Source: Magallana gigas (Eukaryota). Taken from it: a stretch of 64,000 nt of DNA. The notes under the pieces are model-generated. The model was not told where the DNA came from. It made no database searches and saw only the letters and a list, made by a program, of their open reading frames with translations. The position numbers and the translations under genes are program-made. Positions 3,776 to 47,479 of the stretch are shown piece after piece (position 1 is the stretch's first letter; every line of letters starts with the position of its first letter). The DNA is taken from NCBI RefSeq assembly GCF_963853765.1, contig NC_088857.1, positions 47,678,001 to 47,742,000 on the forward strand, written 5' to 3'.

Positions 3776-4873
3776 TATAGTTCAGAGTAATCTAATAAAT
3801 GAATAAAAGATTCCTTTATTTTTTTTTTTTAACTGGTCAATTTTTTTTATCGCACCCCTAGTATATTTTTTAAACATTTTTAATTCTTTCCCTTCAGTTA
3901 ATGCATATAAGAGCATGTTCTGGTTTTGCCATTTATAATGTTGTTGATATCAGATGGATTGTGAAGATTAGTATGAAGTACTTGGAGATGACAACTGTTG
4001 GGGAAATGCTCCGATTTTCAGGTACAAAAATCTGCAGATTAGGATCAGAGATACTGCTCAACAGCAGCAATCCATCACAACTGTCAGGGAATTAAAATGG
4101 CCTGATCCAGCTTTGACACTGAGAGACATAAAGAGGAGAGATTGTTATTTTCACTTTTTTCCCTTTTAATTCAAATCTGACACAAAAGCAGCTGCTCATA
4201 AGAGGATGAATCTGGGGATAGACGGATTAAACGACCATGCATCTGCCTTATCGCTTTACTTAAGTCTGTCCTCTGAACATATGAAGTGTTAAAATGGAAT
4301 TAGAGGGATGTCTTCTCCTTTTGCACAGAAAGCAAACCCCAAAAAGGCTGGGCCTAATCCGCTTTGTATTAATTCCTTCTCCATATTTTTTTTTTTGCAT
4401 CTTCATTTTCCTTCTTGTCCAGAGCTGTGGCCTGTATAAGTTCAAGGGTTTTTTTGGGGGGGTTTTCTGTTTGCCTAAAAAGCAAAAGAATCATTTTATG
4501 CATGTACATAAATACCTGTACTGACTGTAAATGTACCATACAACAAATGAAAGAATATTTTTCCAATTATCTGCTGGTTTTTGATATATATTTTTAAAAA
4601 TCATTGTCTCCAGAAGTGTTTAATGGATTAGGTCAATGAAGACTGCAGATTGACCAATTGGTACCTGACAAGCTTTAACAGAATAATGACCACCAGGCCT
4701 TTCGTAGGTGATGGTGACAAGGTGTTATAGATTTGTGTCTCTGGGCGGATTAAGACCCTGGACCATCTGTCATCACCCTAGCTTAAACAAAGCTGATTAA
4801 ATGTAATCAGTGGTAAGGTGATGGAGTTCACCCCACCGAGTAATTACTACATGTAGCACAGACTTTGTCTCTG

Positions 4874-4877
<4 letters not shown>

Positions 4878-4944
<67 letters not shown>
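4878..4944. repeat. (CT)n microsatellite
   Basis: Pure CT dinucleotide run. Confidence 0.98.
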
Positions 4945-4947
<3 letters not shown>

Positions 4948-6253
4948 TTCACACATAAAGTTGATGAAAGTTGCAATGTTCGTTTTGGGTTTTGGTATAT
5001 TATTAAACTGGAAAAGCTAAATGGAAAAGATAGAAGGATGTTTTTTCTTCATCCTGGAAATACCACATGAGAATATTACCCAGTAACCCAAAAGAGCAAA
5101 GTTTGGGTTACTATATATTTGTTATTTATAGTGCAGTGTGTAGAACTCCATATTTTTTGACTTAAGTTTCATCCTTGCTTGAAAAAAAAATTAAAAATCA
5201 AAACGCAGCTGGTCAAAAAGTGTAAGAAATAAAATAGAATGATTTCAAGAACTGACTACAATACTTTCCTATCAAAAAAGATTGTGATATATGTTTTATG
5301 AATTTTATTCTTTTTATCGGAAGACATGAACATTTTTGTAAAATGAAAAAAAAAAACACTAAAAGATTCCTTAAGGAAGACAATGAAGAATTTATGTTGG
5401 GAAATTCATGCTTTGGGGCAAAGATTGGGTGGTTTTTGGAATTATTTCATTATTTATCTGAAAAGAATTTTATTGCTAAGGATTTCTGATGGGGGCTTAT
5501 CCTGTTTGCAGATTAGAGAGGAAGTTTCTGGGAGGTAGAATAGTCTTGGTATTTCAGAGAGGATAAGGACCTAAATTTATTTACTTTTGTAATAAAACTG
5601 GATTTTAAATTTTTAGAGGTTTTAAAGAGGATTTATCCCTTTCAGTTAAATTGAAAAATCTCTGGACGGATTTAAGATAATTTCCTCCGTGCTTATAAGG
5701 ATGATCTTTGTCCGACTTCTTTGAATGACGACTTTAAATTTTATAAATGCTCGACACAGAGAGAAAGTAAATAAGCTCAAAGTGTTTAAAATTACGATCA
5801 CGGGATTAATTTGCACCAAGCTTACGGATTTGATATCTGTTTTACTTTTCGATAAAATAGAATATTTAGATGACGAGTTAGGAATATGTATACCTCTTGA
5901 GTGAAGAATGAATTTATAAGAAGTTTTTTAAAAAAAACTGAGTTGTCTACTCAAGCTCATGTCAGGAGCAGTAGCAAGGTTCGGAGCTCTTGAAATATGT
6001 TGAGATTTTTGTTGATCCTCCATTCTATGAACATTTTATCAACCATTAGTATAATCGTGCTTCACTGATCTTCAGAGCAGTAGTATAAATGTAAGGGGTA
6101 TACAAGAAAATGAGAGAAGTGCGACTTTCATATGGTTGATAAACTGAAACAAATCTTTTCCCTTCAGTTATATGGGGGGTTTTTTTTCCCTCAAATGTAT
6201 TACATTTTATATACCAATTTATGTTAAATTCAAACTTTTTTTTCAAATCTTAG

Positions 6254-6704
6254 GAGTTAAATCTTTGCCCATCCATTGTGTGATTGAGCAAACAAATGGA
6301 CCTTTGACCTTTGAACCTGACAACACTGCCACCTACAATGTGGAGTTGGATACGTATGCTATATTGCCATGTACAACCCTGTTCTCGGAGCTTTTACGAA
6401 CAGCACTCGTCAAACTTGGATACAACGCCAATGAAGCCATGAACGCAAAAGGTTTTGATTAATTTCACATTTCCACAATTCATTTTAAATAAGAAATATG
6501 CACAATAATGACATTGTTAATTATTTCTGAATAGATTAGTTATTTCAAGAACCATGTAATTGAATCGTTCAATCTAGGTGCCATTCAGATCAAGAACTGG
6601 AAGCCACTCAGTTTTGAAACCATTACTGAAGACAGTAAGTCAACAATTGAGGACATTCTGGGTGACCTCACACAGACAGCCAAACTGAGGATCAGACTCT
6701 GCAG
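6254..6704 (+). CDS. dve: Compass/dve/SATB-class homeobox gene, shared ULD (CMP) domain exons 6254-6451 and 6578-6704
   Basis: Spliced translation GVKSLPIHCVIEQ...YAILPCTTLFSELLRTALVKLGYNANEAMNAKG|AIQIKNWKPLSFETITEDSKSTIEDILGDLTQTAKLRIRLC matches the CMP/ubiquitin-like domain of dve/SATB. GT-AG sites, phases 1/1/2. The first coding exon is unresolved; phase-1 candidates are 3973-4021 (MKYLEMTTVGEMLRFS) and 5489-5534 (MGAYPVCRLERKFLG), both speculative. Confidence 0.9.
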
Positions 6705-7727
6705 GTAAGTTTGTCTGTCTGAGACCAAAAAAACAGACAAAAATGGACGTCTGTCAGGCCATGAGAGTGAACCTTTCTATTCACTTGATTCCAGGAAATA
6801 TATTGCGCATATATACACATGAAATTTTAGGAACATTATTTGAAACTTATCATTTCAACAAATTCCTTTTGTTATCGTTTATTTTCTGTCATAAAAAAAA
6901 AATAATAAAACCTGATCAGATATGGGCTAAGACTCACTGTGTCTTTATGTACTTTGATGATTTTTGTAGACACACATTTATAACTCTAAAAGCATCTTCT
7001 TCAACTATATTAGATTTCAATCGTCTATGTAGAGTGTAAATCTGATGAAATAAGGAGATTAAAAGCTATGCAACACTGATTTGATGAAGCAATAAAAGTA
7101 CAACTGCCTGAGAAGATATACTGCAAGATGTACCAGTACTCTTGCACTATAATCGTTACAAGATAAACTGCAGTAGACAGTTGGCTTTCATTACCATATA
7201 CTGTACATGTATTAATGGAAGAAAGTAAACAGATTAAAAAAGAGAGTTTATACAAAAAGTGTGTGACCCTCTCAGTATGCATATTCAAAGTGATTCACAA
7301 GGTATTACATGTAAAAACAACAAATGATAGAATATACAAATGATAATACTGTAATATATAAGGAGGTGGCATTATTTATAAAGTGAAAAAAATTGCTCTG
7401 TACGGTTTTCTTAAACTGCATATCATATTTTAATGATGTTTAAATATTACCTTATTTACTGGTAACATTATGTATAATATATTTTATATATCAAAAAAGC
7501 AAAGGCAACTATTGTGTGAGCATTGTTTACAGTGTGGTTATTTTAAGAACATGTAGCTTTACATTTTTTTCTTTTGGTTATTTTCTTTTTTTTTTATTCT
7601 ATACTCTTTAAAACACAAAAACTTTTGGAAGCATTTTTCGGTACCTTATCACTGTGACGATGTTCTGGAGAGCTGCGTTGAAAGTCTCGCTTTCATTTCT
7701 TGCCACTCTCACTTTCCTTCTTTACAG

Positions 7728-10700
7728 TAGTACCAAACTCAGCTCCACCGATGAAATCAAAGGGAAACTACTCCAGCTTCTGTTGACTCAGTCGCAAGGC
7801 CTCCTCATGAGCTCTGGTTGTCCGATTGAAAAGGTGAGTGAGGGAGATGTTGTTATGCGACAGGTAGTGCTGTGCCTGGAGTAATCTAAGAGGATGAATA
7901 AAGCTGCTAGTTTTTATACTTTCTCTGCAGGAGTTTAAAGCAGTTGTTTTAAATTAGTGCCACAGCCCCTAGATGGTTTGTCATTTTAATTTGTGATGAA
8001 CATTGTATATACAGACAAGATAATTAAAATTAAAGAGGTTGGGTTGGTTTGTTTTGTTAGCAACAGAAGGGGTTTTATATGTGAGTATATTGTATTGCCT
8101 TCTGTTATTGGATTCTCTTATTCCTAACTAGTTGAAGTCAAACCTGAACTGAATGATCTACACAATAAGCAAAGCTTGTCTTCCATATTATTTAAAGCAC
8201 ATTGAATAGGAAATCAAATCAGGGTTATTTGATCAAATCCTTATATTTTTTAAAAAACAGAAGTTAAAATTAAATAAGAATACATGTATTAAGATACTAC
8301 CCAATGAACTGTATCAATAATTACATATCCAGTATAAACCTGTCACTCAGATGTCCTTAAATGGCCGTGATCTCCTGTCTTTTGTTTTTAACCTTGTTTC
8401 TTATAGCTAGCTGAATTGGTATTCAGTTGTTAGGGGGCAAATTGATTTTATAGATCTTAAATTTTAAGATTTATTTTTGACCATGAAGTTATTTCAAAAA
8501 AAGCATGCAGAAGCCTATATTTTTATCTGCCATTTGGCACCTGCAACAAGAAATTTTAGACCTTGTCATGATGTGTTGTAGTTGGAACTGAAGTCCATAA
8601 ATGTATAAGTGAATATTTTTTATGGCAGGAGCTAGATCTTATCACTTATGTGGATATTTGACAATAACAGCATTTGACATATTTGATAAACCATGCATCA
8701 GCGATTCAAATACAAAAATGGCCCATGTGTCCATGTGCTACATTCATATTAATACATTTATAGGAAATAAAGGTATTAAGCACTCTTATTAGCATATCCT
8801 CAAATCTTAATGTAGTTTCTAGCGGGGTTTTTTTGTCAAGATTATATCAAAAAAATATTTATTTCCCCTTATATTATCATTAATTTAGCAGAAGCATTCC
8901 AAAAAAAAGTACTGAACAAAAATAAAACAGGAGATACACCACTCTGATTAAGGGGTAAAGTGAGACATTAAATATTCACCAGTGATTGTAAACTTCTACT
9001 GTGATAAAATAGTAGAAGCAGACAGGGCCAGGTTTATATAAAGTCTGAACATAATGGAGGAGGGATCCTTCTACGGCTTCATTATAAAATGTATCCAAGC
9101 TCATTATAAAGTGTATTCCGTTTTTTCTCACCTGTGTGATAGGAGCATTCTGTATTTAAAAAAGCAAATGTAACTTGACCTGGTCATTATAGCAGTAACA
9201 GCTCACTCTGTCTGTATACTACAGGCTTAATGGTGATGTACTGGGCTGTTAAAATGTCATTCTCAAATGTCCAGCAGAATCCACTGAATGAGAAATAAAG
9301 TTAAATATGATCATTCAAGTGTTTTAAGAGTGGGTTTTATTTTTCTAATGAATAAATAAACCAGTTATTAAAGCTGATTTTAAAGATTCTTTCATTTTTC
9401 TTGATGAAGATTTATTTCATGATAATTTTAAATACTCGTAGATGATTACAGATGAGACCTTTATAACGTACTTATAAATAACAGCTGTTTATTAAATACT
9501 TTAAAGGTTATGGATCTGATAATATGAGGGTAATGTGAAAGTAACCAAGATTTCTGCAAATAGTATCGGTAAATAATTAAACACCTGGGATCAGTGTTAA
9601 TTCCCGGTCAGATACTTAGTAACACCTATAACTTGGTCTACAAACTCATATTTTTATATATTAAAATATGATATAAATCAGCCACTGAAAGTTGAAATAT
9701 GAAAAGTTATGACTGAGTTAGTGTGTAGATAACTGATTTGTGTTCCTACAATAGGAAGGAATTCTTTTTATCATAATGTATAGGAACTAATAAACCCATG
9801 AAATAATCTCAAATTTGAGGAAATAACTCCAAATTGTGAAATTGTTCACATGCAGTAATGATCATTGTTTAAGACTGCAGATTAAATTACTGAATACATA
9901 TATTGCCATTGAAAAATACTTCATTTATTTATATAACTCTACAACTGTATTATCAATACCGATAGCTTTACAAAGAAGTTTTCAAAACAAATATACCACT
10001 TTTTCAAAGTGTTATCCTTGGTGTAAAATATTGTGTTTCTTAAGCGGAAAAAAGAATTTTGAAGTTGTCCCCACCTTTCTGTTGCTATGGATTTATGATT
10101 ATTTTCTTCAAGAAATTAGATTCATAATGATTGCTAAAAATTATTTAATGAAAATATATTTTCATTTTATATTTTGCAGGATCTCTTAACATCTTTGAGC
10201 AAAGGGGACAGCTTTTCTAATTTGCCCCTAGAAATCAGAAAATCATTTGACAAATGGTATCAAGACCTGCATAAACAGCACAGTGAGGAGGCAAGGCATT
10301 CGAACACCTCTACCCCAGAGAAGCTCCCAGCCTCACCCCAGAGGGAACAGCAAAGTTACTCCACAAACCATGCTCCCCTGCATGGCAAAACCAGAATGAG
10401 AACGTCGTTTGACCCCGAGCATGAAATTCCACGGTTGCAGAAGTGGTTTGCTGAGAATCAGCACCCTCCTAGAGAGGTGATGATAAAATACCTAGAGGAG
10501 TTAAATTCTCTTGACTCTAGAAAAGGACGAAGGCCTCTGGATCTGACCAACATCATATACTGGTTTAAGAATGCTAGAGCTGCGCACAGAAGAGCATCCA
10601 AGTGCTTTGATGGTGACACCTCATTTGAAGGGGATGAAATTAATGACGAGAGTACTAATACTCAAGAGAATGGCTGTTTTATGGGTACCAGGGGCCTTCC

Positions 10701-11955
10701 ATACATGTTGCCTTACCCATTTCAGGGTATCTATGGTTCTCATGATATTTTAGGAGATACTCTTAAAGAGCCATGTGACCTTTCTCAGGCAGGTCAAAGG
10801 GCAAGGATGAATGGCATGAAAAAAGAGGATGAAGCAGAACGGACGAGTAAAGTTGAAGGAGAAAGAACAGAATCAAAAAGTGCAGATACAGACCTGGACA
10901 AATCAGATGATGATGAAGGAGACAAAGAGGGGCATACAGTATCCATTAAAAAGGAAAGTTCTTCACCATCTGATGGTGAAAAGACTTCTGATACTGGCGA
11001 TACTCCATACCTACCCAACAGAAATGCTGTGTATGTTCTGCCTCATCAGTACAGCCAGTATAAGAACGGTCAGGATGCCGACGAAGAACCCAGGGAACCA
11101 TGTGACTTGTCAAATTCTCATAAATCTAGTCAAGTGAAAAAAGACATTTTGGACACAGCAAACAACAACAAGAAAAGAAAGAATTCATCAGATGATGAGC
11201 AGGAGAAGGAAAACTCCAATGGAAAGGCTGACTCGCTGAACAGGTACAACACTGAGAAGCAGAGGTCCTCATCACAAGATTATCCCAACCACTCCAGCCG
11301 CTCCAGCAATGGCAATTCGGAGGTTTTTCACTCAGGATCTGATGATGACAATGATCTGGAATCCGATATGGATGATAGCCAGTCCTACGCAGGATCAGAA
11401 TCTAGTCATGAAGCCAAAGATGGAACCTTTATAAGGGAGGCCCACATGGGCAGTTACAATGCAAACGCTCTCTCACGACTGCAGCAACAGCACGGTGCAG
11501 CAGGATTACATCATCCTCTCCACATTCCCCATTTCCCCCATCCATTGGCCATGACTTATTTCCCCATGAATAGTCATTTTTTACAGCAAACAACAAGATA
11601 CCAGCAACAGCAGAACTCTCAAGCTATGTCCAGTGACGAATCTCCTACCGATCATCACATCAAGTCCGGCAGCCTCAGTTCTTCTCATCGCAAGCGACGA
11701 ACTCGAGTCTTCATAGACCCAATGTCTGAGATACCCAAGTTGGAGAAATGGTTTGCAGAGGACACCCACCCTTCATCCTATATGATTGATAAGTACTGTG
11801 AAGAGCTGAATAAATCTGAATACCGCCAAAAGTTCCCAAAGCTAGAAGCCAAAAATGTACAGCTGTGGTTCAAGAACCACCGGGCAAAAGTGAAGAGAAT
11901 GAGGGTGTCCTCTGTAGATTTACATGGGATGGAGTATAGGATGGAGAAATGTTAA
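7728..11955 (+). CDS. dve: Compass/dve 3' cassette A: exons 7728-7833 and 10180-11955, degenerate CUTL plus two atypical homeodomains
   Basis: The acceptor at 7727 is phase 2, matching the donor at 6704; 7833 joins 10180 in phase 0. HD1 KTRMRTSFDPEHEIPRLQKWF...IIYWFKNARA (~10387-10590) and HD2 RKRRTRVFIDPMSEIPKLEKWF...VQLWFKNHRA (~11689-11900) are typical dve homeodomains with K50 and an extended loop before helix 3. About 735 aa from 6254 to the stop. Confidence 0.92.
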
Positions 11956-14900
11956 CAGAAATTTGTTTGTGCATTATTTAACTTCATTTGAAGGTCTACA
12001 CATTGAATATTGTTTTGGTACACTTGTTTCTATGTATCTCAAAGTACTTGTTATTAATAGGAATTTCTGATATGTAACAAGTTTTTGTTATAAAAAATTG
12101 TATCAGAATTTTGAGTGTTAGGTCAGTAGGTTACTTTTACCTGAGGTGAGAGCTCTGCCTGTTCAGGTACGCACTCTGGGGTAAGAGAAAAATGATATGT
12201 CATTGTCATCTTGAAATGTCAGGTTGTGTGTTTTTATCTCCAGTGGATGTGTTTAAGATATTATTGTTACACCCCATATTTATTAACGTGTTGTTTACAG
12301 TCGGGGGCTACTGGCAATTCTCATGAAACTACCGCATAATTATGTTTGGTTAGATGTTCACATTGGGTTCTATAGGCCCAAAGTTAGTCACATTTTTGTT
12401 ATTTACTAGAACTTTTCCCCTTTGCAATTGATTAACTTTTTAATATACGTAGTTTACATATTGTTCTATGTGGTTGAAGGTGCTATTTTAAGAAACAATT
12501 TCTGATACATGTTTTAACATTGTTCATACATTCATCCGCCGTTGGAACCTAGTTGTCATAACATCACTGCCCATTAATGCAATTGCTGACATTTTTATAA
12601 AAATTGCATAAGATGCTTTTACGAATCAAAGGGAATAATATTTCTTTTATTAAGAATTGTACAAAAGAAACAAAAATTATTTATCTACTTAAAAGATTGT
12701 TTTCCAAGATATTTTTCTTGAAATAATAGCGCTACTCCATGTAAAGTTTGAAATCTAATTTCAGCTTAAGTACACTCTAGCTCATTTTATTTCAAATTGT
12801 TTTAGTGTTATTTTTTTTTTAATGACCAAAGGGGTACTGGTTAATTAGGTGGATGCAGGGTCAATGCTACATGTATAACAGGGCTATGAGCTCTCTCTGT
12901 ACCTAGAAATGCAACTTCTTGGTTATAAACTAACAAGGTACAGAAAAACTGGATATCTGATACTTCTGTTTAATTTACATTCCACATGACAAAACCACAT
13001 TCTGGTTGCTCCACAGGAGGGTAATATATTTTTAACAGCTCTCTCTATCTCCTGATTATTTTTATTTTTCTTCTTCGTGATAGAATTTTGGACTGTTTGG
13101 AAATCTCTAAACCTTTGATTCATAACTATAGAAATTATTTCTACAACCATCTATTGATAACAAAGACAGTTTTTGTCTGCTAATAAAACATATATGTATA
13201 TTTGATCATTAATATTTTGATTCCTTATATTCAATCATGATTTAGTTTGTATGCTTTGTTAAGTTTGTCGAAGTCGGTAAAGTGATAATTTTTTTTAATT
13301 TTTGCAATTTCTGGGTGATCTCTAGCTGGTCTTTATAAAAATTGCAACTTCTGTAAGACAATTTTTAATTTTTTTAATCTATCATGAATAGATTTCTTTA
13401 AGTTTAAGAGGGAGTTCAGTGTAAATTTAATAAACAAATTATATTTGAAGTCAGTTTTCCCAAAATTATACTGAATCATGATTGAATATAATGGTAGAAG
13501 AAAACAATTGTACTTAAATTTGAAGAGCTTACTGTTTGCATGATTTCTGTTGCATCACACAGACGCCAGATGACTTAAATTCATCTGTACTACTTTCACT
13601 TTTAGGCTCCAGTTATCCTGCTTTTTCTAGTGTTTAGATCTATGTATTCTTTGTACCCATAACAAGCATTTTCCTTCTGAATTTTTTTTATATATATGTT
13701 TTATAAAAATCACAATGATTTTATTTTATCTGATTAAGGGCTGATTATAATCTCAAACTTTTTTCAAGTTGTAGAGGCAAATGTTGCTCCTAATATTTCT
13801 TAATGCTCATAGATACCTCAAGAATTGAGATTGTTTTTAATGAAAATTAACCCTAGGTTATTGCTTTTTATTATGAAATCATGTAAGATAACTATTTTTT
13901 TTTTCTATGATTGGTTTATAAAGTCATATGAATAAAAAGGACTGAAATCAGAAACTATGGTTGATGAACCGAGACTCTTTTGAATTATTCCCCATTATAG
14001 TTCTGCTCAAGCGGTATTTTCTTGACTTGTTGAGTATCCAAACAAGTCATCTATTTCTTTGACAGCAGTGAATTCAAATTCTCTGTGCTCCTCTCACCAC
14101 GATACCAGTTTTTCAAGTGCGACAGAAATTGGTGAATAAAAAAACCGTTTTGGTTTAAAACAACAACAAAAAATAGACACTTTACATTCCATTGAAAAAT
14201 TTTTAAACAGAGTTATATATTGAGATTTATTGTCGGTGAATTTATTTTTACATGATAATTTAGATATTAGCCATGAACTGGAAAAAAACATAGCAGTTTT
14301 GGATATGTGAAGTCAGTATTTTTAATTAATGTCTTGAAACATAACATGTTTGTTAAGGTTTACTTCAAGTGCTATAATCAGTTATATAACCTGTTTTTTA
14401 TCAATCAAACTATTTATTGTATATGACTTACTCAAGTCTACCGAATAGCTCTGTTTCAGCAGGCACCTAAGTAATTTATTATGTATTCAATTGAATATTT
14501 ATTAGGCCAGTGGTCATGTTAGTCTTCTCCTCCTACCGAATCTATGTGGTTTTCTTTTTTTATTTTAAGCTTTACTGATTTTAATCTACCGCATCTCACC
14601 TCCTTTTTATAGTGCTGAGATAAACAAACAAATGATAGAGAAATATTGAAGTCTTGTCAAAGCTAGTTTTAAAGGGTTATGGGCAATAGATGAACTGTTT
14701 ACTTTTTATGGTTTTGTTCTACTCAACTTTTTTTTTCTTAATTGACTTCCTTTTTAGCAGGAATGTGTTCATATTTTTTTTAATTTTGGGAAATGAATTG
14801 TGGGTAATGGACCCACGCGAAATGTACATCTTTGGTGGTTGTCTGTAGTTTTTCTCTTGTTAGCTGTTTTTTTTTTCTTTTTGCCTTTTTTTTTGTGTAG

Positions 14901-15505
14901 TTCAGATGTCTTAGAATATTGTCTTTTTTGTTGACTCTATAATTTATAGAGACATTATTATTATTAAATATTATGACTATTTTTTCCTTTTATGAGTAAC
15001 TCTGTGACTATTGACAGGTAGACGGTTTTTATCTCTTTAAGAATCAGGTGTAACTTTTTGTATATCCCGACATGTGATCTTATTTTTGCATTTTATGTGG
15101 TTCAATCTGGCCAGAACGCAGAAACGAACAAAAGTGCAGAATTTTTTAGAAAACTTGTTAATTATGCACTGAGATTAAATCTTTTGTTCTCAACAATAGT
15201 TGCCTTTGCATTTCATCATCAGGAACTTTATACAAAAAAATAAGAAGCCAAAAAATTTTGTTGTTATGTCAGATATATGCAATAAAAATATGATCGTCAG
15301 AACTTGCGCATTTGTTCAGATTTCATCTTTCAGGTGTTCGTACCTTTGTTTTTAAGGGTTCTCCACACCTTTCAGAAAAGTTAAGCATACAAGTCCTAAC
15401 TTCTTTATTAACTAGAGATATGAATTCTAGCATGCATTCTACTTGAAAATGACAGAAAAAAAATTAATTTAGGGCACAGGGGCCTGTCACGAAGTGTTTT
15501 TAAGT

Positions 15506-15566
15506 TTTTATATCTACCACCTCTATACAATAAATATTATATTGTACAGAGGTGGTAGATATAAAA
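15506..15566. repeat. Inverted repeat with 27-bp arms, one mismatch and a 7-nt loop
   Basis: ttttatatctaccacctctatacaata (15506-15532) pairs with tattgtacagaggtggtagatataaaa (15540-15566). Confidence 0.9.
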
Positions 15567-16819
15567 CAAAAGCCCTGCTGTATTCTAACTCGGGACCTGT
15601 GGGTCAGTTGCCTATAGCTATACCAATTGCACTACAGAGTTCCACAACCAAATTGATATAAACAGTTTCAAAATGGGTTGAAATCACTATATACTGTCAT
15701 AAGAAGTAAAAGAAATGGGGTGCCAAGGACCCTTAAACTCATATTTTGCTCACTCTCTCTTGAATAAGTTTTTTATGAATTTTAACCCTTATTTAAGTTA
15801 AGTTTTTAATATTTTTAACTTGGTTGAAACAACTGAATGGTTTTTTACCTTAATTGGAATGTAGCTACTTGTAACTTCAGTGGTAGATAAACATGAATCA
15901 ATCATATGGAGAAAAATTCCGCATAAACAGCTAAAAATATTGAACTACCTGACAAAATGATTGGCCTAAAGAGACAAATAAACAGTTTAGGGGCCTAAAA
16001 TTGAAATGTTTTCTTGCAATTAGATGTATTGGATTAGTTCTAGTTAAAAACCAACATTTATAAAGGGTTTTTGGCATGCATAGTCACCAATTTTTTTTTT
16101 ATATTGCATACAATGATACCTATTGATGTAAGAAGAAGCAAACTGGCAAAAAAAAGGGCAACTGATGCTTTAGTAACGGAGACTAAAAATAAAAAAAAAT
16201 TGAAAATTTTATCGACTTCAAAGCATAAATACAGTGAAAAACACCTGTATCCAAGTGCCAGAGACAAGTGATTTCCCTGTTATAAGAGTAATTCGATATA
16301 TCCGTCTAGTTTACATTATATTAAAGTCACGGTAAATGAAAATCATTTACGGTAGCTGTAAGTGTCAATTCATTATAAGCTTGTTAGCTTTAACAGTATT
16401 TTACTGTAGAGGAAATAATCGCTGCTTATGTAAGTTTTTATATAAAATATAAATTTAACTATGTGGTCAAATTTCAAACTAAGTTTAAAATGTAAAAAAT
16501 GTTACCATGGAAACCAATGATGATTTTTTAAAACTTTATTTTTTAGGCTCAACTGAACAGAAGGTTCAAGTGAGCTTTTCTGATCACCTGTTGTTCAGGG
16601 TCCATCCATTTGTCTGTCTATCTATCTGTCTATAAACTTTTACACATTTTTACTTCCCTAGAAATAGTGCAAAGTATATTTATGTAAAGGGGGTTTTAAA
16701 TTGTTAAAAATAAAAGACAAAGTTCAACATAGAATTAAATAGGGATAATGTTTAAAATTCTTTTCAAGATCGAACTACAATGACACAATGTGTAAGATTA
16801 CTAAGCAAGCATCCTAATA

Positions 16820-17021
16820 TACTGTGGTTTCATTTATATTGAAGGGTATCAATTTTCGTGGATTAAGTGAAAATCAAGGATATGTAAATTTGTTGGCAAT
16901 GATCCTATCTACACAATATGGTATTTGCAATGCACTTCAATGAATATTTAATTTCATGGATCAACTTTACAATGAAATCCATGAAAATTGGTCTTCAACA
17001 AATATTGATGAAACCACAGTA
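16820..17021. mobile_element. TA-flanked MITE (Tc1/mariner type), nested in the Helentron-type element
   Basis: TIRs TACTGTGGTTTCAT ... ATGAAACCACAGTA; a related partial copy starts at 42684. Confidence 0.75.
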
Positions 17022-17419
17022 GTATATATTTGAAGTTGTTAAAACCGTGACCCTCGTACCGGAAGAGGAATTCAAAGTTTAACAAAGAACATAGGGAATA
17101 TATGGGAAAAGTTATCAAAAATCTTCTTTTTAAAAACATTAATACCACAAACTGTGAGATTACTATGCAGGCATTCTCAGATAGTATAAATTGTAAATTA
17201 TTCAGACCTTAACCCGGGACCATTTGGGGGCCCCAAGAAGAGTTCATTGCTTTTCATAGAAATATATACCGGTAGGGAAAATCTTTAAAGATCTTCTTCT
17301 CAGGCATTTGGCCCCCATAATTTGCTATTTTTAAAGTGTTTCAGGTACATTAAATTGTTGTTATATTTAGAATTGATTATATTAAACATGTTTTCACCAG
17401 TTAATTTATTTGTACCCAA

Positions 17420-17810
17420 TGGCAGTATATGACATCAGAAGTGAAGCTACCATTGTAATTCAATCAAAATCAGTCAAAAATTAACTTTTATTTGCATTTT
17501 TTTAATAAAAAATATTGAGCGAAGCTTTGAACAAGAACAAAGTATTTGTCAAGTCTTGGTGAAATACATCTTTGATCAAAATATTTTGTCTAAGCAATTG
17601 CTCAATGTTTTCTGATAGAAACACTGCTTGAAAACAAATCTTTTTATGCTAAAAATGCAAAAAAAAGGTAGAAAATTGGTGAACTTTTTGATGTCATATT
17701 CAAAATCACATGCATTTGGATTAAAATAAGAATTATGAAGAAAAAAAAATTCACATGCTTATTTGTACATAGGAAGCAAAAAATTATTACAGTAATTTGA
17801 TGATGTTCAT
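17420..17810. repeat. Dispersed repeat, homologous to 28964-29270
   Basis: Shared collinear blocks gacatcagaagtga, tgtaattcaatcaaa, tcaatgtttt, tgcttgaaaa, ttttatgctaaaaatgcaaaa, ttttgatgtcatatt, ggaagcaaa, attacagtaa. Confidence 0.75.
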
Positions 17811-19219
17811 TTTAGGGGGTCATATTAGGCTCATAACATATACCTGTGTATAGTTCTTTGTGAGATTTCTATGCAGGAATCCTCCAATGGCATAGGTTGT
17901 AAATTGTTCTAACCATAACCCAAACCCATACCAAATTTGGGGCCACAAGAAGGGTTCAAAATTTAACATAAATATATATATAGGAAAAAATGTTTAGATT
18001 CTTTTCCTGGAGAACTACAATGATACGTTTATAAATGTTACTATGTAAGCATCCTCATATCTTCATACCCTCAATTCAAGGTCACAGTGACCTTCTTTCA
18101 CTTTTTATAATTATTTGTACTTAATTTTCTTAATTTGTTATCTTTCATACATTGAGGCCTTGACTGATAAGATTGGCCAGTTGATGATTCGTATACATAT
18201 TAGGAAATGATATCCAAAAGTGAAGGCTTCTGTTTACATTTATTGTTTTAATGTATTATTGTTGTTCAGGTGAGCGATGTGGCCCGGGGGCCTATTGATT
18301 TTTTGTTTTGTTTATCGTAGAAGTTAACATAAAATCAAAGTAATAAATGTATATAGTGTTTTTTAAAACATTGTAAATGAGACCTGTTGCTATATGGAAA
18401 CAAGGTTAAAATTAAGAAGAAGTGATTCTAAAATGCGAAATTTAGTATTAGGTTTAACGACAATTTAGAGGAACCATACCATTCTTTGTTTGCTATTTGA
18501 AGGCATGTAAGCATTATGCAGCAACATGAATCTGTCGTTGCCTAAAAAATATTTGGACTCGGAAATTCATTCAGAAAATATATATTAAAATTTTTAAAAA
18601 CGTCATAACCAACGGCAAAAGTGAAGTTTCAGTTGATATTATATGGAAGTGTACATGTATGGTCATTCCGATTAATTTATTTTGAAGCATCGTGTCACTT
18701 GTATGAATAAAAGTTCTTCAAATGTACCGTAAAATATTTTATTTGTGATTCTGCTTAATGTCATCCAGCTGCAGCCCAGCTCCAGAGATCAACAACACAT
18801 ATAATTAATGTGTGGTGTATTTGTGGTGTATTAAAAGAGATAGACAAACAAAACTTGAACAACCGTACCTTCCCTAGTCGTTTCGGCGGGTCTCGGAAAG
18901 AGCGCCTTAAATTTTATACATTCAACAGACGTTTTAACTGCACAAAATCAGCACCACCACCACCCCCCCACCACCACCAACCCAAACAAAGTATTCAATT
19001 GACAGAGGTCAACATCTCTACCGAAGTATATGTTTTAAGTTATGTCTTTGATTACAATAATTAATTTTAGCCCCAATCTCAACAAGTGGTAGTCTACTCT
19101 ATATACTAGAATATACTTCAATGATTACACAATGGGAAGGTGTTGGACACGTTAGTCATTTGAGGTCAAACTTCCAAGCAGTCAGGTGCCCGGTCATTGA
19201 ATGTTCTGTTGTGTTTTAG

Positions 19220-20944
19220 CTCACCTGGGCTGATTTCTCCCGAGAAATGGACCGACCAGACCGTGAGGTGTGCCGTGCTTGCTCTACTAAAGGAAATGAG
19301 CCAGTCAACTCTTGCCAAATTGTGTCCTCTTACTCAGGTAAGCGCTTCATGTTCTTTGCAATCGTCATCATCAAAAATCACAGTTGTTTTCCAACCAGCC
19401 TTGTGAATTTTGATAGTCCGCATGATAAGACTGTTTTCAATCACGTTCCATTTAGATTAGAAATAGAGCTTTTCATTTCGATTTCAAGTTTATGAAAATT
19501 GTTTACAAGATATATCAACGGTGGATGTGTCGAAAGGCCACCGGGTTGTAGCTCTAAAATCAATTTGTGAACAAATAATTAATTGTTGTGATCATACAGC
19601 GTTAATAAACAATATTCCTCTGAAAAGGTAATTTGTGCTTTATCCGTTCTCAGGAGGCTTTGGGAACTTATCACGTAAATTTATTAATTATAAATTTTAA
19701 CCCTTATATAAGCAACACGTACGATTGTTCAGTTTAAATGAAATGTCTACGACGAGCCGCGTAACAATCATATCCTTTTTACAAATCCGTGGCCTCTTTT
19801 TCAGTCTGCGATCTCCAATATTGCCAACTGGAAATACACAAGCAAAGTCAGTGCCGATAAATGTAAGGAGTTCGGTGTTTGGTATAAACAATACCATTCG
19901 ATGAAAGGTATGACTTCATGCATGTACACTCTATACCAATATTCATGTATTGTTGTTTTTTAAATGAATCCATCGTCCGAAACTCGCCGACAGTTTCGCA
20001 TAACTTACTGACCATGGGTCAACTCGCCTGAATATTTCTTGTTCTCATAAATACTAGCAATTATATTATATTCTTTATGTGCTTAAGATGTGCATCTTAT
20101 GTCATTTTGCACAACATGAGAAAATGTACATGTATCAACAATAATTCATTTTATAAATACATTCTGTGTTTAGAAAATTTCAATATCATGAGTAAAATTT
20201 GTTCTTAACACGTTAAGAGTTTCGCTCGATGATTTGTGAATAACAGTTCAAAAGTAAGGATACGTGAGTTACAGCAGAGTCCGTTAACTCGGTGGGAATT
20301 TATATTATATGAAATTCTAAATGATTTAATTCATTCGGATTTGATTGTATCTCCTATTATACGTTCTATCAAGTATCCCCTCCTTATTTATTATCGATAA
20401 TTGAATTCGGCTAAAGGGGCAGGAATTGTACGCCACCAGAAGCTGGTTTTCATACGATTTTGAATGTTCCCTTTTACTTTCAGAGATTCGTGGTGAAAAT
20501 TTTGGGATACCCAAGGATTCAAGATTGACATTTCACCCCCAACATGAAATTCCGCAAATGAGGAAATGGTTCCATTCATGCAAGACTCCTTCTGATGAAA
20601 AATTGAAGTTTTTTGCAGCTGAACTGAATAAAGGTCACGTGAGACAAGAGAGACCGAACGTGACTGTTGCTAAACTCAAGATATGGTGGAAAAATGAACG
20701 ACAAAGAGAAAAACGAATGCAGCAGCAGACGCAATCCGAAAACGAGGCTCATGGCGGGAAATGCGATGAAGATGAATCCCAGCCGTCAACATCATCAGAC
20801 GAAATTGCCTCAACATCCAAATCATACGTCGAACTTACAAACGTATCGAACGATTTGCTTACGTCTGAATTATTATGTAAGAATAGCTTTTCCAGTGAAG
20901 GATCGAATACGGGCGACTTGTTCCATGACGCAGATTTTCACTGA
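19220..20944 (+). CDS. Compass/SATB-like 3' cassette B: exons 19220-19337, 19805-19907, 20484-20944, CUTL plus one atypical homeodomain
   Basis: Translation SPGLISPEKWTDQTVRCAVLALLKEMSQSTLAKLCPLTQ|SAISNIANWKYTSKVSADKCKEFGVWYKQYHSMK|EIRG...SRLTFHPQHEIPQMRKWF...KLKIWWKNERQREKR. The first two exons align with the SATB1 CUTL domain as recalled ([61 protein letters not shown]). All junctions are GT-AG and in frame (phases 2,0,1). The TGA stop overlaps AATAAA at 20944-20949. Confidence 0.85.
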
Positions 20945-21478
20945 ATAAAGCACTGACATCGATGTCCAGAGGATTGCTTTGCAAATTATTCTGGATATGA
21001 ACAGAAACATATTCAGTGAATATATTGAAGGAATTTATTTTTAATGATTATTCATCACAAATATATCAAATATAGTCAACATTTTGGAAACTTATATAAT
21101 GTTACTGGACACATTGAGTTACATAGTAACGAACTTGATACCACAACGGTCGTGTATCTCGGAGTAAAAATAGCTTGTAATGACCTTAACATTGACGAAA
21201 GTAGAACTAACCTCTACAAAAGACAAATGTGGTTGATTATGATGAGAGATGTTCTACCAATATGTCAACCAACCCCAAACCAAACCTTCGTTTTGTTACT
21301 TATGCAATAGGATCAAGAGTTACATTTCATTAGACTCTCAACTTGGATTGTATTCTGTTTCATTTATTTCTTGTTGTTATGGAATTGAAAATGTTTTGTG
21401 TTAACATTGAATCAAAAAGTTTTTGTCTCTCATTTTCATATAAGACAGTAGTGAGTACTGTGCCGGTTGCAGTTTGTT

Positions 21479-22290
21479 TTTATTAGTTCACCTGATCCAA
21501 AGCTTTTCCGTTGTCAGTCGTCGTTTTTTCGTCGAGTCGTAAACTTTTCGGTTTTGTCTTAAAAACCAATAAGGCCATTTTTTCAAAATGGACACAGTGC
21601 ATCCTTTGGTATAGTGGATGCTAGTTTCATTAAATGAAGTGTCAAGGCATCTCTCAAGGGCTGATTAAACAGATTTTGTGGTTTTTTAAAAAAGAATTCT
21701 TCTCTAGAACTCCTGCATTAAAAATGATGTAAGGTATGAGTATATTATTTGTATACAGTGAAGATTAATCTTTGTTCAATTTATGAAACACATGGACAGA
21801 AGAGGCTACAACAAGGGATCAAACTTTTACATTACGTTAAATAAAACATAATGGAAATTAAAATCGTCCAAAGAACATGTCATACTTCTAGGGAAGCATC
21901 CACAAGACTTGTTCATGTAGATTCAATATTGTTGTGTTTTTTTTAATCATAAATTTCAAATAAGGTCGGGTCAACTACGTTAAAAGAGGATCATAATTTT
22001 CCATAAAATTATGATAGAAAAAAAATCTTTTCAAAAAATGTTCACGAAAAAAAATTAAGACTACTTAGTATTATTAGTCACATTTAAAGGAAGCGTCCTT
22101 ATAAAGCTGGTGATTATAGATTAAAGTTTTTTCTTAAAGATTATGGCCCCTGGGAGTAGAGTTGGGAACTTACAGAATCAAACTTTTACATGGAGATGTA
22201 TTTCTGCAAAGAATACATGGGAGTATGTGTTATCTTTTCATGCAATGATTGCTACATTTATAGTTTGTATGTAAAAATGAACAAGAAGAC
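21479..22290 (-). mobile_element. Degenerate Helentron-type element fragment
   Basis: Starts with ttattagttcacctga...gtcgtcg...cgtaaactttt, resembling the reversed terminus of the other copies; the right end is uncertain. Confidence 0.4.
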
Positions 22291-23793
22291 ATCTATATAA
22301 AGTTAGTGAAAATGTAAAATGCATGTCGATCTACTGAGTAAGCTGATGTTTGGGATTGACGAAAGTCTTACTATTTGGAAGTATGACGTCAGTCGGTGCA
22401 GTCTGCAGTCTGTGTTTTTATTGTAGCCACAGTTTCGATCATGAAATATATTATAACATTGGTACTTGTATTTGAAGAATTGGTATCACTTTGTGAAATG
22501 AACACTGCTAAATATAATGGGTTAGAAGGCGGATTTGTATTAATTAGATCGTGTTATTCAGCTATGTCAATGGCTATAGGATCGAAATCAGATTTCTTAA
22601 GAATATTAAGAGAGAAAGTTATTAAAATTCTAAAGTATACAAGTACCTTCATAGAGGTAGTAGATTCAAGTTTGTCGAAGCTTGACCCCTGGGGATAGGG
22701 GAGAGTTTCAATAAGAGATCAAAACTAATTTACATCTGCGTTTACAAACTGAAGCACTCCATGTGCTAAAAATCACGTAAGCACCATATAACCTTTTGCC
22801 AAGTAGTTAAAAATAAAAGAATTAAAGAAATTAATAATCAAATTAGAAGCGTACAACTGTGAACACGTGATACAAAGCACGTGTTAACTCGAGACACGTA
22901 TGTAAAAGGTGTTTAGCAAATGATTTACAAAAATTAATTTTAACTATTTCAGTCTCTATAAGTATATTCTATTGGTTATAATATAAGTTATATAAATAGG
23001 TATACCTGATAGTTATTCCTGTAGCATGATTGACCCTAATTGAGCAAAGTCGCAATTTCGAATTAATCTGTATAAAATTCCTGAAATGATTTGAACATTT
23101 TGAATATACATGTATATATACTCTATAAGGATGCGTTATAAAAGAAAATAACTTTCATAAAATTTTAAAAATTTCAACTTGATAGCCAAAAATATGTAAA
23201 TTAGTATCAAAAAATAAATAAAAACGGTTCAGGTAATATTTTTGAAGGGTGTATTTATATGAAGAAGTCATTATACTATACAGTCATTTTATTTGATGTC
23301 GCTTAAGAGAATTAGTACATGTATATTCAAGCAAAATGATATAAAGGAAGTGCACATATCCCAAATGCACCCCCCATCCCCCAATTTTTTGTATTGGTTT
23401 TAAAAGTGCTATTTTAATTTACTTCTTGAAATGCATTGAAAATTGCATATATGACATATCAATACACTTAGCATTTGGAATTCCATTAAAAAAAACTGTA
23501 TGATTTTACATTTTCTTATCCAACACGTTTTGCACTGAGTGTTACACAAGAATATGTGAAACTTTGTACTTGGAAATAGAAACATATACTTTCAAAAGAC
23601 ATCTGGTTTTTTTTTTTTGCATTAGTAACTTTCTTATATATTTTTAAAGAAATGGTCCGAAGGAAGAGAATCAGTATTCAAAGGTGTTACCCGTGCGGCG
23701 TCCTGAAAGAAAGTGAATTAGCGCGTCACCAACATTACGTGACCAAATAGAGCCCTCTCTTCTTCTTGATAATACACATTTAAAAATTGTAAA

Positions 23794-23797
<4 letters not shown>

Positions 23798-23885
<88 letters not shown>
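23798..23885. repeat. (TA)n followed by short (CA)n microsatellite
   Basis: Visible dinucleotide runs. Confidence 0.97.
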
Positions 23886-23886
<1 letters not shown>

Positions 23887-23989
23887 AAATAACAGAAAGC
23901 CGATTCAAAACTCTACCGGTTTCATTATAATCTTCCTGAAGATTATAATGAAACCGGTAGAGTTTTGAATCGGCTTTCTGTTATTTTGT
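23884..23989. repeat. Perfect palindrome with 52-bp arms and a 2-nt loop
   Basis: 23884-23935 is the exact reverse complement of 23938-23989. Confidence 0.93.
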
Positions 23990-24014
23990 ATTATTTATTA
24001 CTTGTGTGGATTAA

Positions 24015-24168
24015 NNNNNNNNNNNNNNNNNNNNNNNNNNNNNNNNNNNNNNNNNNNNNNNNNNNNNNNNNNNNNNNNNNNNNNNNNNNNNNNNNNNNNN
24101 NNNNNNNNNNNNNNNNNNNNNNNNNNNNNNNNNNNNNNNNNNNNNNNNNNNNNNNNNNNNNNNNNNNN
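24015..24168. other. Assembly gap (N run)
   Basis: 154 Ns. Confidence 1.
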
Positions 24169-45800: not shown

Positions 45801-47443
45801 CTACAGCCTCAAAATGGTTTGTTATGAATAAGTTGACTGTTATTTTCAATGCAGCTTATTAATTTTCTCAAAAATTGTTTTGGAGCAATTCTGCAATTTT
45901 TTTGCTACATTTTGGGTATGTGGGAGGCATTTTAACTGTGATGAAGGCCTGTCTTGAGACACAATTAGATTATTCTAACTAAGCAGAGTGTAGTGAAATT
46001 AATAGCATTAATGTAAGTTTAATTGGATAATGTCAACAATACGGTGTGTCGATGCATCTATTTCTTAAATGTCTGATATCATTTGCAAAGTCAACCCTGG
46101 CACGCACTGGTCAAAGTCTAGTAGATTAAAAGCTAGTGAATTAGTTAAGAGCAAGACAATGTGCTAATAACGATAATAAAGTAATGAGTTCACACAGATC
46201 CTGCTGTTCATTAACACCTTTATTTTTATGTCAAAAAGGCGTAGGTTTAACTTTATTTACAAGCTGATAATTGATATAGAAAAATTAAAATAATGTGCTA
46301 ATGAATGAAATTATTATGTGGTGGAAACATGATGAAATCTATATGATGTGCTAGACTAGTAAAATAATGACAACAGAAAAGTAATCCTCCTTAATTAATT
46401 CGTTACATTTTTACCAAGTTACCTAGAACTGACCGATTAATCCTTGACACCCATTACTCATTGACAACCCTACTAGCTTTACATTACATACCCTCTCCTT
46501 CAACCAGTTACTAATTGACAACTTATATATTACCTACCCTATTATCTTCAGCCAGTTACTCATTGACCACCTAACTAGTTACATTTTATATGTACCTTCT
46601 CCTTCATTCAGGGCAGCCTTGTCCCCATAAGCCTCCGGGACAATCTTGGCGTAACTGTGACCCTCCGCTGCATCGAAGGCGGCCGTGTCAAAGTACACAG
46701 ACCTATTGGACTCGTACCTGTCAACACCAAAAATAAACTGGAATGTGTACTGGTACTGGCAGGGTACAACATGGACCTCACATTAATCAAAAACTATTGA
46801 CACGAAACAAAGACAAGATCACTAACAAATAGGTATCCCCTAGCAACTGGAAATTATTAAAAAAAACAAGAAGCCCAGGGGCCACATCGCTCACCTGAGC
46901 AACAATATCCTTAACTCTGATCAAATTAGCATTACAGTATCAAAATAAAAATATTTTTTGACAACTAAGTACAGTAGATCTTGCTAAAAAAATTTTAAAA
47001 ATCTACCGATTTTTAACCACATATTTTTATGGTAAATACCAAGCCCCTTTTGTTGTTGTACCTGTAAGAAGATTTTTCTCTATTCCTATATACCCCCCCC
47101 CCCACCACCACCATTTTGTGGCTCCACTTTTATCTAGGGAATCATGGTTTGATCAAACTTTAATCTGCACAACCCATGCTTTCACACAAGTTACTGCTTT
47201 TTGGACTGAAAACTTTCCCAGAATATTTTTAAAGATATTCCTATGTAAAAATTCATCCCCATTGTGGCCCCGCCCTATCCATGGGGACCATGATTTAAAC
47301 AAACTTGAATCTACACTATCTGAGGATGCTTCCACTCAAATTGGAGCTTTTCTGGCCTATTAATTTTTTGATAAGAAGATTTTTGAAAAAACCAACAAAT
47401 TTTCAGTAATTCTAAATGATCTCCCCTTTCAAAAGGATGTGGC

Positions 47444-47479
<36 letters not shown>

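What the first reader, a model, noticed from the sequence alone, without database searches (positions are those of the whole stretch)
6254..20944. One Compass/dve locus with two alternative 3' DNA-binding cassettes (dve-type and SATB-like)
Seen: the last ULD exon ends at 6704 in phase 2 (AG|). Two downstream exons accept that phase and both complete a Ser codon: 7728 (AG|T) and 19220 (AG|C). They are paralogous halves of a CUTL domain with the same internal phase-0 intron (CPIEK|DLLTSL versus CPLTQ|SAISNI). Cassette A gives ULD + degenerate CUTL + two homeodomains (~735 aa). Cassette B gives ULD + a CUTL much closer to vertebrate SATB1 + one different homeodomain (~335 aa). I found no second ULD between 11955 and 19220. 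Known: the ULD oligomerises SATB proteins. Inferred: alternative terminal cassettes put two different DNA-reading modules on one oligomerisation domain, so mixed oligomers are possible. The locus may preserve an intermediate between dve/Compass and SATB architectures.
Basis: partly seen in the sequence, partly recalled or inferred. Interest (0 to 1): 0.82.

Follow-up and report, generated by a model that had tools for sequence, protein, structure and literature searches.

The report
Oyster Compass gene, two alternative ends
One oyster transcription-factor gene joins a single oligomerisation domain to either of two different DNA-binding ends by alternative splicing. This layout was published in 2013 as unique to sea urchins and acorn worms, so it is probably much older than thought.

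Summary

- **Species and transcripts.** The window is Crassostrea (Magallana) gigas or a near-identical oyster. Assembled RNA contigs at 98-100% identity join the ULD exons (6254-6451, 6578-6704) to either cassette.
- **Cassette A** (7728-7833, 10180-11955) gives an 801-aa dve/CMP form with two homeodomains.
- **Cassette B** (19220-19337, 19805-19907, 20484-20944) gives a 401-aa form with ULD, a SATB-like CUTL and one homeodomain.
- **Shared 5' part.** Both forms share the same 5'UTR, start codon and 66-aa N-terminus, which lie upstream of the window.
- **One ULD only.** No second ULD exists in the window, and no first exon of B's own was seen.
- **Current annotation.** RefSeq and the oyster homeobox catalogue treat the locus as two genes.
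- **Prior description.** The design is not new. Cavalieri et al. 2013 described the same Cmp/Cmpl alternative splicing in sea urchin and hemichordate, but called it exclusive to ambulacrarians.
- **Wider distribution.** B-type proteins occur in bivalves, a gastropod, a brachiopod and chelicerates. Their homeodomains cluster with a hemichordate third homeodomain, so the locus is probably ancestral to bilaterians, although the trees are not decisive.
- **SATB link.** It is suggestive only.

The scan's notes hold no earlier finding of this kind.

The parts
6254..6451 (+). Shared coding exon, first two thirds of the ULD (Compass) domain. It enters in phase 1 from an exon upstream of the window.
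   Evidence: Pfam ULD E 1.6e-13. Present in both A and B RNA contigs.
6578..6704 (+). Shared coding exon, last third of the ULD. It ends in phase 2 (AG|gtaagt) and is the common donor for both cassettes.
   Evidence: Pfam ULD E 3.8e-12. Joined to 7728 in L020-L029 and to 19220 in L010-L019.
7728..7833 (+). Cassette A exon 1: first half of a degenerate CUTL domain.
   Evidence: No Pfam hit, but a family CUTL profile scores 45.9 bits. Spliced in A contigs.
10180..11955 (+). Cassette A exon 2, coding part: second CUTL half, dve-type homeodomains 1 and 2, and the stop codon.
   Evidence: Pfam Homeodomain, 2 stretches. 99% identical to the C. gigas A form XP_011435909.1.
11956..13030 (+). 3'UTR of the A form. 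The longest contig ends at 13030, and AATAAA lies at 13182.
   Evidence: L020 maps to 10178-13030.
19220..19337 (+). Cassette B exon 1: first half of the SATB-like CUTL.
   Evidence: Pfam CUTL 22.4 bits. GT..AG joint 19337>19805 in RNA contigs of 3 runs. Joined to 6704 in L010-L019.
19805..19907 (+). Cassette B exon 2: second half of the CUTL; it ends in phase 1.
   Evidence: Pfam CUTL 38 bits. Joint 19907>20484.
20484..20944 (+). Cassette B exon 3, coding part: a single atypical K50 homeodomain (WWKNERQRE), an acidic/Ser-rich tail and the stop codon.
   Evidence: Pfam Homeodomain E 7e-6. Held by 20 RNA-seq runs from 8 studies.
20945..21679 (+). 3'UTR of the B form, with poly(A) signals at 21629 and 21664.
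   Evidence: L010 to L012 map as far as 21649-21679.

Best explanation
This is one transcription unit of the oyster Compass (Cmp/dve) homeobox gene. One promoter, 5'UTR, start codon, 66-aa N-terminus and ULD oligomerisation domain are spliced from the single phase-2 donor at 6704 to one of two mutually exclusive terminal exon sets, each with its own stop and poly(A) site.

- Using the proximal acceptor at 7728 and polyadenylating near 13 kb gives the 801-aa CMP form: ULD, a degenerate CUTL and two homeodomains.
- Skipping that set, reading through its poly(A) site and splicing to 19220 gives the 401-aa form: ULD, a well-conserved SATB-like CUTL and one different homeodomain.

The junctions, the shared 5' part and the domains are shown. 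Three further points are inferred:

- the choice is regulated by competition between splicing and polyadenylation;
- the two ends read different DNA, as was shown experimentally for sea-urchin CMP and CMPl;
- co-expressed isoforms can form mixed oligomers through the identical ULD.

For: **Transcripts in the window's species**
- B form: P0151, 401 aa, on 41 contigs. L010-L019 map exon by exon at 98-100% identity.
- A form: P0168, on 17 contigs (L020-L029), and C. gigas XP_011435909.1.
- L010 and L020 share their first 823 nt at 99.6% identity.

**Other oysters**
- ULD-to-B ORFs also occur in two other oyster species (P0019 on L001-L006, and P0152).

**Reads laid on the window**
- Spliced B1-B2-B3 contigs occur in three RNA runs from three studies.
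- Each carries exactly 28 letters before 19218, which is 30 letters before the exon. That equals k-1 of the 31-mer assembly, the break expected where the upstream exon has two continuations in the same library.
- No joint enters 19220 from 15200-19219.

**Sequence constraints**
- There is only one ULD in the window.
- B1 begins at an acceptor with no in-frame ATG. A B-only product would start inside the CUTL, as in the 201-aa RefSeq model.

**Comparative evidence**
- The order ULD-A-B on one strand is also seen in Lingula.
- ULD+CUTL+B-type homeodomain proteins occur in Potamilus, Mizuhopecten, Nucella and Trichonephila. CUTL+B-type models from Ixodes and Nymphon lack a demonstrated ULD.
- B-type homeodomains plus the third homeodomain of Ptychodera form one clade with support 96/81.
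- Ptychodera and Anneissia also have a second CUTL, of B type.

**Literature**
- Sea-urchin Cmp/Cmpl has the same design. Common N-terminal exons carry the Compass domain, then a 2-exon set with two homeodomains or a 3-exon set with one. The CMPl product is 396 aa, and CMPl but not CMP binds boxB (PMC3784565).
Against: - Full-length A and B contigs come from different runs. Co-expression in one sample rests on the k-1 break inference.
- De Bruijn contigs prove the junction but not long-range phasing of the first exon with each end.
- The raw poly(A) reads of X24 gave almost no depth on the B exons, so there are no read counts or isoform ratios.
- RefSeq models in C. gigas (201 aa) and Saccostrea (238 aa, with a 5-nt ATGGG first coding exon about 750 nt upstream of B1) suggest a possible ULD-less transcript.
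- Orthology with CMPl is not proven. An AU test does not reject Ptychodera HD3 grouping with the ambulacrarian HD2s (p 0.485).
- The oyster homeodomain loop is one residue shorter than the 11-residue CMPl hallmark.
- No sea-urchin CMPl sequence was available for direct comparison.
Confidence: 0.87

Rival explanations
1. There are two separate tandem paralogous genes, as RefSeq (LOC105334238 and LOC117686659) and the oyster homeobox catalogue (Cmp1, Cmp2) have it. On this view the ULD-to-B transcripts are read-through chimeras without function.
For: Existing annotations list two genes (PMC5322547). Saccostrea and Pinctada are also annotated as two genes on one contig.
Against: - B has no ULD, no start codon and no first exon of its own in the window.
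- The RefSeq B model starts at a Met inside the CUTL.
- The ULD-to-B ORF is complete, in frame and assembled in dozens of runs and three oyster species.
- The same architecture is conserved in a spider, a unionid, a scallop and a gastropod.
Confidence: 0.05
2. In addition to the ULD-containing form, cassette B is transcribed from an internal promoter. This gives a ULD-less CUTL-homeodomain protein that could act as a monomeric competitor.
For: The Saccostrea RefSeq model XP_062617361.1 begins with a 5-nt coding exon (ATGGG|gt) about 750 nt upstream of B1. C. gigas XP_034318030.1 is a B-only model.
Against: - No joint enters 19220 from the 4 kb upstream in three RNA runs, and every B contig there continues 30 letters into an upstream exon.
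- The region around 18.2-18.4 kb is a repeat with very high unrelated RNA depth, which could seed false first exons.
Confidence: 0.2
3. The oyster B cassette and the ambulacrarian Cmpl cassette arose independently, by separate tandem duplications of the CUTL-homeodomain part in each lineage. The 2013 claim of an ambulacrarian novelty would then still hold for Cmpl proper.
For: - The AU test cannot reject Ptychodera HD3 grouping with the ambulacrarian HD2s (p 0.485).
- The lophotrochozoan B loop has 10 inserted residues, not 11.
- The alignments are short (66-80 columns) and have long branches.
Against: - The order in the locus is the same: the 2-homeodomain set first, then the 1-homeodomain set.
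- The exon numbers (2 and 3) and the product sizes (396 and 401 aa) match (PMC3784565).
- Both have a second CUTL in front of the single homeodomain.
- Both share W49 and the NER motif in helix 3.
- The best tree gives a joint clade with support 96/81.
- Chelicerate B types have the 11-residue loop.
Confidence: 0.15

Closest known systems
Cmp/Cmpl locus of sea urchins and Saccoglossus (Cavalieri, Melfi and Spinelli 2013, PMC3784565)
   Same: - One locus with a common 5'UTR, start codon and N-terminus carrying the Compass/ULD domain.
- Mutually exclusive terminal exon sets: two exons give CMP with two homeodomains, three exons give a protein of about 400 aa with one atypical W48 homeodomain.
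- The two products accumulate differently and bind different DNA.
   Different: [quoted passage not shown] - The second CUTL inside the cassette is not mentioned in the paper.
- The function of the oyster isoform is untested.
COMPASS family: Drosophila dve, C. elegans dve-1
   Same: The A form has the N-terminal Compass/ULD, two K50 homeodomains each with a 10-residue insertion, and no CUT domain. It clusters with insect dve HD1 and HD2.
   Different: No B-type protein from an insect or nematode was recognised among the hits I could name. That is not a proof of absence.
Vertebrate SATB1/SATB2
   Same: Both have a ULD followed directly by a CUTL. The B form matches the SATB1 ULD-CUTL crystal chain 4q2j at E 3.7e-35, and its CUTL is about 54% identical.
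   Different: The B form has no CUT1 or CUT2 domains. Its homeodomain has W48 and a 10-residue loop, whereas SATB has F48 and a one-residue insertion. Only part of the SATB1 tetramer-interface motifs (KWN, EFH) is conserved.
CUX/CASP alternative splicing in the CUT class
   Same: One gene whose shared N-terminal part is joined to alternative C-terminal exon sets with unrelated functions (Burglin and Affolter 2015, PMC4901127).
   Different: CASP loses all DNA-binding domains. Here both ends are DNA-binding modules and the shared part is an oligomerisation domain.

Membership tests
Cmp/Cmpl alternatively spliced locus (PMC3784565) | The two mRNAs share the 5'UTR, start codon and N-terminal sequence including the Compass (ULD) domain | tested here: met
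   L010 (B) and L020 (A) share their first 823 nt at 99.6% identity. P0151 and P0165 are identical up to the codon split at 6704.
Cmp/Cmpl alternatively spliced locus (PMC3784565) | Mutually exclusive terminal exon sets: two exons with two homeodomains, three exons with one homeodomain | tested here: met
   Set A is 7728-7833 plus 10180-11955. Set B is 19220-19337, 19805-19907 and 20484-20944. No contig holds both sets.
Cmp/Cmpl alternatively spliced locus (PMC3784565) | [quoted passage not shown] | tested here: not met
   W48 is present, but the oyster loop is 18 residues between LN and WWKN, the same as CMP homeodomains (a 10-residue insertion). Ptychodera HD3 and the chelicerate B types have 19.
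Cmp/Cmpl alternatively spliced locus (PMC3784565) | The single homeodomain falls in the CMPl clade, apart from CMP HD1 and HD2 | tested here: inconclusive
   B types plus Ptychodera HD3 form a clade with support 96/81. The AU test does not reject HD3 grouping with the ambulacrarian HD2s (p 0.485). No sea-urchin CMPl sequence was at hand.
Cmp/Cmpl alternatively spliced locus (PMC3784565) | The two products bind different DNA (CMPl, not CMP, binds the boxB insulator element) | not testable with these tools
   This needs binding assays.
COMPASS (CMP/dve) homeobox family | N-terminal Compass/ULD domain | tested here: met
   Pfam ULD 108-110 bits in both isoforms.
COMPASS (CMP/dve) homeobox family | Two atypical homeodomains with a 10-residue insertion, and no CUT domain | tested here: met
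   The A form has HD1 and HD2 with the same spacing as insect dve and sits in the HD1 and HD2 clades. There is no CUT hit. The B form has one homeodomain only.
SATB family | ULD followed by a CUTL domain | tested here: met
   B form: ULD 110 bits and CUTL 70.8 bits. It matches 4q2j at E 3.7e-35.
SATB family | Two CUT domains between the CUTL and the homeodomain | tested here: not met
   There is no PF02376 hit in either isoform, whereas the vertebrate SATB representatives P0209 and P0222 have two stretches.
SATB family | Homeodomain with F48 and a single-residue insertion | tested here: not met
   The B homeodomain has W48, W49 and K50 and a 10-residue insertion. The definition is taken from PMC3784565.

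The most novel reading that the evidence does not exclude
The Cmp/Cmpl two-cassette locus is not an ambulacrarian invention. It was already present in the last common ancestor of protostomes and deuterostomes. The short ULD-CUTL-homeodomain isoform, which resembles the single cnidarian protein, is the conserved ancestral form. The vertebrate SATB ULD-CUTL module descends from this Cmpl-type cassette, with CUT domains inserted, rather than from the dve-type cassette.
Probability: 0.4. Interest if true: 0.72.

Novelty: new variant of a known kind. Interest (0 to 1): 0.58.

Why it matters
- **Annotation.** It corrects the oyster annotation. What RefSeq and the oyster homeobox catalogue list as two genes, one of them a truncated 201-aa model, is one gene with two protein ends.
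- **Published claim.** It contradicts the claim that this locus design is a shared derived character of Ambulacraria, which has been used as molecular support for that clade.
- **Evolutionary depth.** If the homology holds, swapping DNA-reading modules on one oligomerisation domain is an ancient bilaterian regulatory device.
[quoted passage not shown] It gains a concrete candidate ancestor, the ULD-CUTL-homeodomain isoform, that can be tested in many phyla.
- **Function.** In sea urchin the short isoform is an insulator-binding protein. The oyster isoform is therefore a candidate chromatin-boundary factor in a protostome.

Tried and rejected
- **First coding exon and 5'UTR.** I searched for them in the window by blastn with word size 7. 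Nothing matched, so they lie upstream of position 1.
- **L007-L009.** These carry the P0032 A exon but proved to be genomic contigs of a more distant oyster (80% identity). They are uninformative for splicing.
- **First run search.** It returned runs of uncertain type. Only the second search, restricted to RNA-Seq libraries, gave usable RNA holders.
- **Raw poly(A) reads of X24.** They gave essentially no depth on the B exons, so there are no read-level junction counts.
- **Loose letters before 19218.** They were not printed, so the upstream exon had to be identified from the full-length contigs instead.
- **Many joints and loose ends at 16.4-18.4 kb.** They are non-canonical and of very high depth. 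I rejected them as repeat or transposon signal, not exons.
- **Watersipora XP_067939002.1.** It first looked like a ULD+B protein but has two dve-type homeodomains, so it is an A form.
- **AU tests.** I hoped they would settle SATB-with-B and HD3-with-B. Both were inconclusive.
- **Length window of the word search.** The first search missed the ULD+B isoform for this reason. Using the 238-aa Saccostrea protein as query found it.
Full report
**What is in the sequence**

The window is AT-rich animal DNA.

- Two exons, 6254-6451 and 6578-6704, encode a ULD domain (Pfam PF16534, E 1.6e-13 and 3.8e-12). The second ends CTGCAG|gtaagt in phase 2.
- Two downstream acceptors accept that phase and complete a Ser codon: 7728 (ttctttacag|T) and 19220 (tgtgttttag|C).
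- Cassette A is 7728-7833 plus 10180-11955. Cassette B is 19220-19337, 19805-19907 and 20484-20944.
- In both cassettes a CUTL-like domain is cut by a phase-0 intron at the same aligned position.
- Pfam recognises CUTL in B (70.8 bits in the spliced protein) but not in A. It finds two homeodomains in A and one in B.
- A profile built from family CUTLs still detects both A halves, so A's CUTL is degenerate, not lost.

**One gene or two**

The word search with the last B exon found only short bivalve models without a ULD. A search with the 238-aa Saccostrea model as query reached longer proteins and found P0019. This is a 401-aa ORF with ULD and CUTL on contigs of about 2 kb from six RNA runs of a related oyster. 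These contigs map to the window's ULD exons and then directly to B1, B2 and B3.

The 90% cluster of P0019 holds the window species' own version:

- P0151 (401 aa) stands on 41 contigs.
- The cluster of the A exon holds 795-aa ORFs on 3-4 kb contigs and C. gigas XP_011435909.1 (801 aa).
- At 98-100% identity, L010-L019 map to 6254-6451, 6578-6704, 19220-19337, 19805-19907 and 20484 to about 21679.
- L020-L029 map to the same two ULD exons, then 7728-7833 and 10180 to at least 13030.
- L010 and L020 share their first 823 nt at 99.6% identity.

The first roughly 500 nt (5'UTR plus 66 codons) are not in the window. So both forms use the same start and N-terminus and diverge exactly at 6704.

**Independent evidence from reads laid on the window**

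- Twenty RNA-seq runs from eight studies hold the B terminal exon.
- In three RNA runs from three studies a contig is spliced 19337>19805 and 19907>20484 with GT..AG.
- No joint enters 19220 from the 4 kb upstream.
- Each of these contigs has exactly 28 letters before 19218, that is 30 letters of an upstream exon.
- Thirty is k-1 for a 31-mer assembly. I read this as the break expected where one exon end has two continuations in the same library. This is my inference.
- tblastn and a ULD profile run on all six frames find no second ULD anywhere in the window.
- B1 has no in-frame ATG before the CUTL. The 201-aa RefSeq model of C. gigas starts at a Met inside the CUTL.

**What is already known**

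Cavalieri et al. 2013 (PMC3784565) described the Cmp/Cmpl locus of sea urchins and Saccoglossus.

- The products share 233 N-terminal residues with the Compass domain.
- Exons e5-e6 encode CMP with two homeodomains. Exons e7-e9 are mutually exclusive with them and encode the 396-aa CMPl with one atypical homeodomain.
- The two mRNAs have different time courses, and CMPl but not CMP binds the boxB insulator element.

The oyster homeobox survey lists Cmp1 and Cmp2 as two adjacent gene models (PMC5322547). Later reviews mention only CMP with two homeodomains. I found no paper reporting this locus design outside Ambulacraria.

**How widespread cassette B is**

An exhaustive profile-free search with P0151, names and domain scans gave the following.

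- Proteins with ULD, CUTL and a B-type homeodomain (helix 3 reads WWKNE-) occur in a unionid, a scallop, a gastropod and a spider. Ixodes and the sea spider Nymphon give CUTL plus B-type homeodomain models in which I did not show a ULD.
- They also occur in unnamed short RNA contigs (P0184, P0188).
- Lingula and Owenia have B-only models.
- In Lingula the B model lies 1.9 kb downstream of a 993-aa ULD-homeodomain gene on the same strand.
- Saccostrea and Pinctada have A and B models on one contig.
- The hemichordate Ptychodera and the crinoid Anneissia have gene models with ULD, CUTL and two homeodomains, then a second CUTL. In Ptychodera a third homeodomain with WWKNER and the 11-residue loop follows.
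- A sea anemone has a 296-aa protein with CUTL and one homeodomain.

**Trees**

- In the homeodomain tree (56 sequences, 66 columns) the 16 protostome B types plus Ptychodera HD3 form one clade with support 96/81, apart from HD1 and HD2.
- The AU test does not reject HD3 grouping with the very divergent ambulacrarian HD2s (p 0.485).
- In the CUTL tree the protostome A types form a long-branch clade (99/96).
- The B types, the second CUTL of the ambulacrarians, the vertebrate SATB CUTLs and the cnidarian CUTLs lie on the other side (97/96). SATB nests among the B types.
- Holding SATB with the A types costs only 3.1 log-likelihood units (p 0.198).

The orthology of B with Cmpl therefore rests on a sum of characters:

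- its position in the locus;
- the exon numbers;
- its own CUTL;
- the helix-3 motif;
- the product size;
- the best tree.

It does not rest on a decisive test. The closeness to SATB may simply reflect slow evolution of B.

**Mechanism**

Shown:

- one donor, two acceptors of equal phase, two stops and two 3'UTRs;
- poly(A) signals near 13.18 kb and at 21.63-21.66 kb.

Inferred:

- Making B needs read-through of the A poly(A) site and skipping of the strong acceptor at 7728. The choice is therefore a splicing and polyadenylation competition.
- Full-length contigs of A and of B come from different runs of the same series. This fits samples in which one form dominates.
- The ULD of SATB1 tetramerises, and this is needed for DNA binding (PMC3351170). 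In the oyster only W of the KWN motif is kept, F98 is Y, and E97 and H162 are replaced. Oligomerisation, and mixed A/B oligomers, are therefore plausible but untested.
- B should bind DNA through the CUTL plus a K50 homeodomain, and A through two K50 homeodomains.

**Verdict**

The interpretation of one locus with two alternative DNA-binding ends is supported by transcripts. The design itself was published for ambulacrarians, so this is a variant of a known kind in a phylum where it was said not to exist. The one-residue difference in the hallmark loop keeps me from filing it as a strict CMPl member. The SATB link and the mixed oligomers remain hypotheses.

Noticed in passing
window 16400-18400: Several short stretches have RNA contig depth in the thousands, many non-canonical joints and many loose ends, for example a (CCGT)n-like run behind 16594. 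They look like dispersed repeats or transposon fragments between the two cassettes, not exons.
   Followed up: partly
window 4830-4960: A (GA)n/(CT)n microsatellite lies in the intron upstream of the first ULD exon. In the ORF list it reads as RERERE / SLSLSL.
   Followed up: no
window 23680-24168: A long (TA/TATA)n-type microsatellite (YIYIYI in translation) is followed by a 154-base run of N at 24015-24168.
   Followed up: no
window 47260-47543 (- strand): This stretch matches three places in the Saccostrea locus L031 (1400-1477, 12622-12663, 19086-19151) at 77-90% identity. It is probably a mobile element shared by oysters.
   Followed up: no
window 20484-20944 (exon B3): Some transcripts (P0157, P0161) lack one Gln of the MQQQTQ run. 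Position 20899 A>T (Glu to Asp) occurs in all three laid RNA contigs. These are probably polymorphisms.
   Followed up: partly
P0186 / P0312 (Ptychodera flava XP_070534583.1, XP_070534582.1): These RefSeq isoforms put ULD, CUTL, two homeodomains, a second CUTL and a third homeodomain into one 1135-1143-aa protein. This is either a fused model of the two cassettes or a third, read-through isoform.
   Followed up: partly
P0189 and P0210 (Nymphon striatum): The sea spider has two B-type proteins. One (739 aa) has two B-type CUTL domains in tandem, at 434-497 and 558-630.
   Followed up: no
L031 10001-10005 (Saccostrea cucullata): The RefSeq B-only model starts with a 5-nt coding exon, ATGGG|gtaagt, about 750 nt upstream of the B1 homologue. 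It is either a possible alternative start or an artefact of gene prediction.
   Followed up: partly
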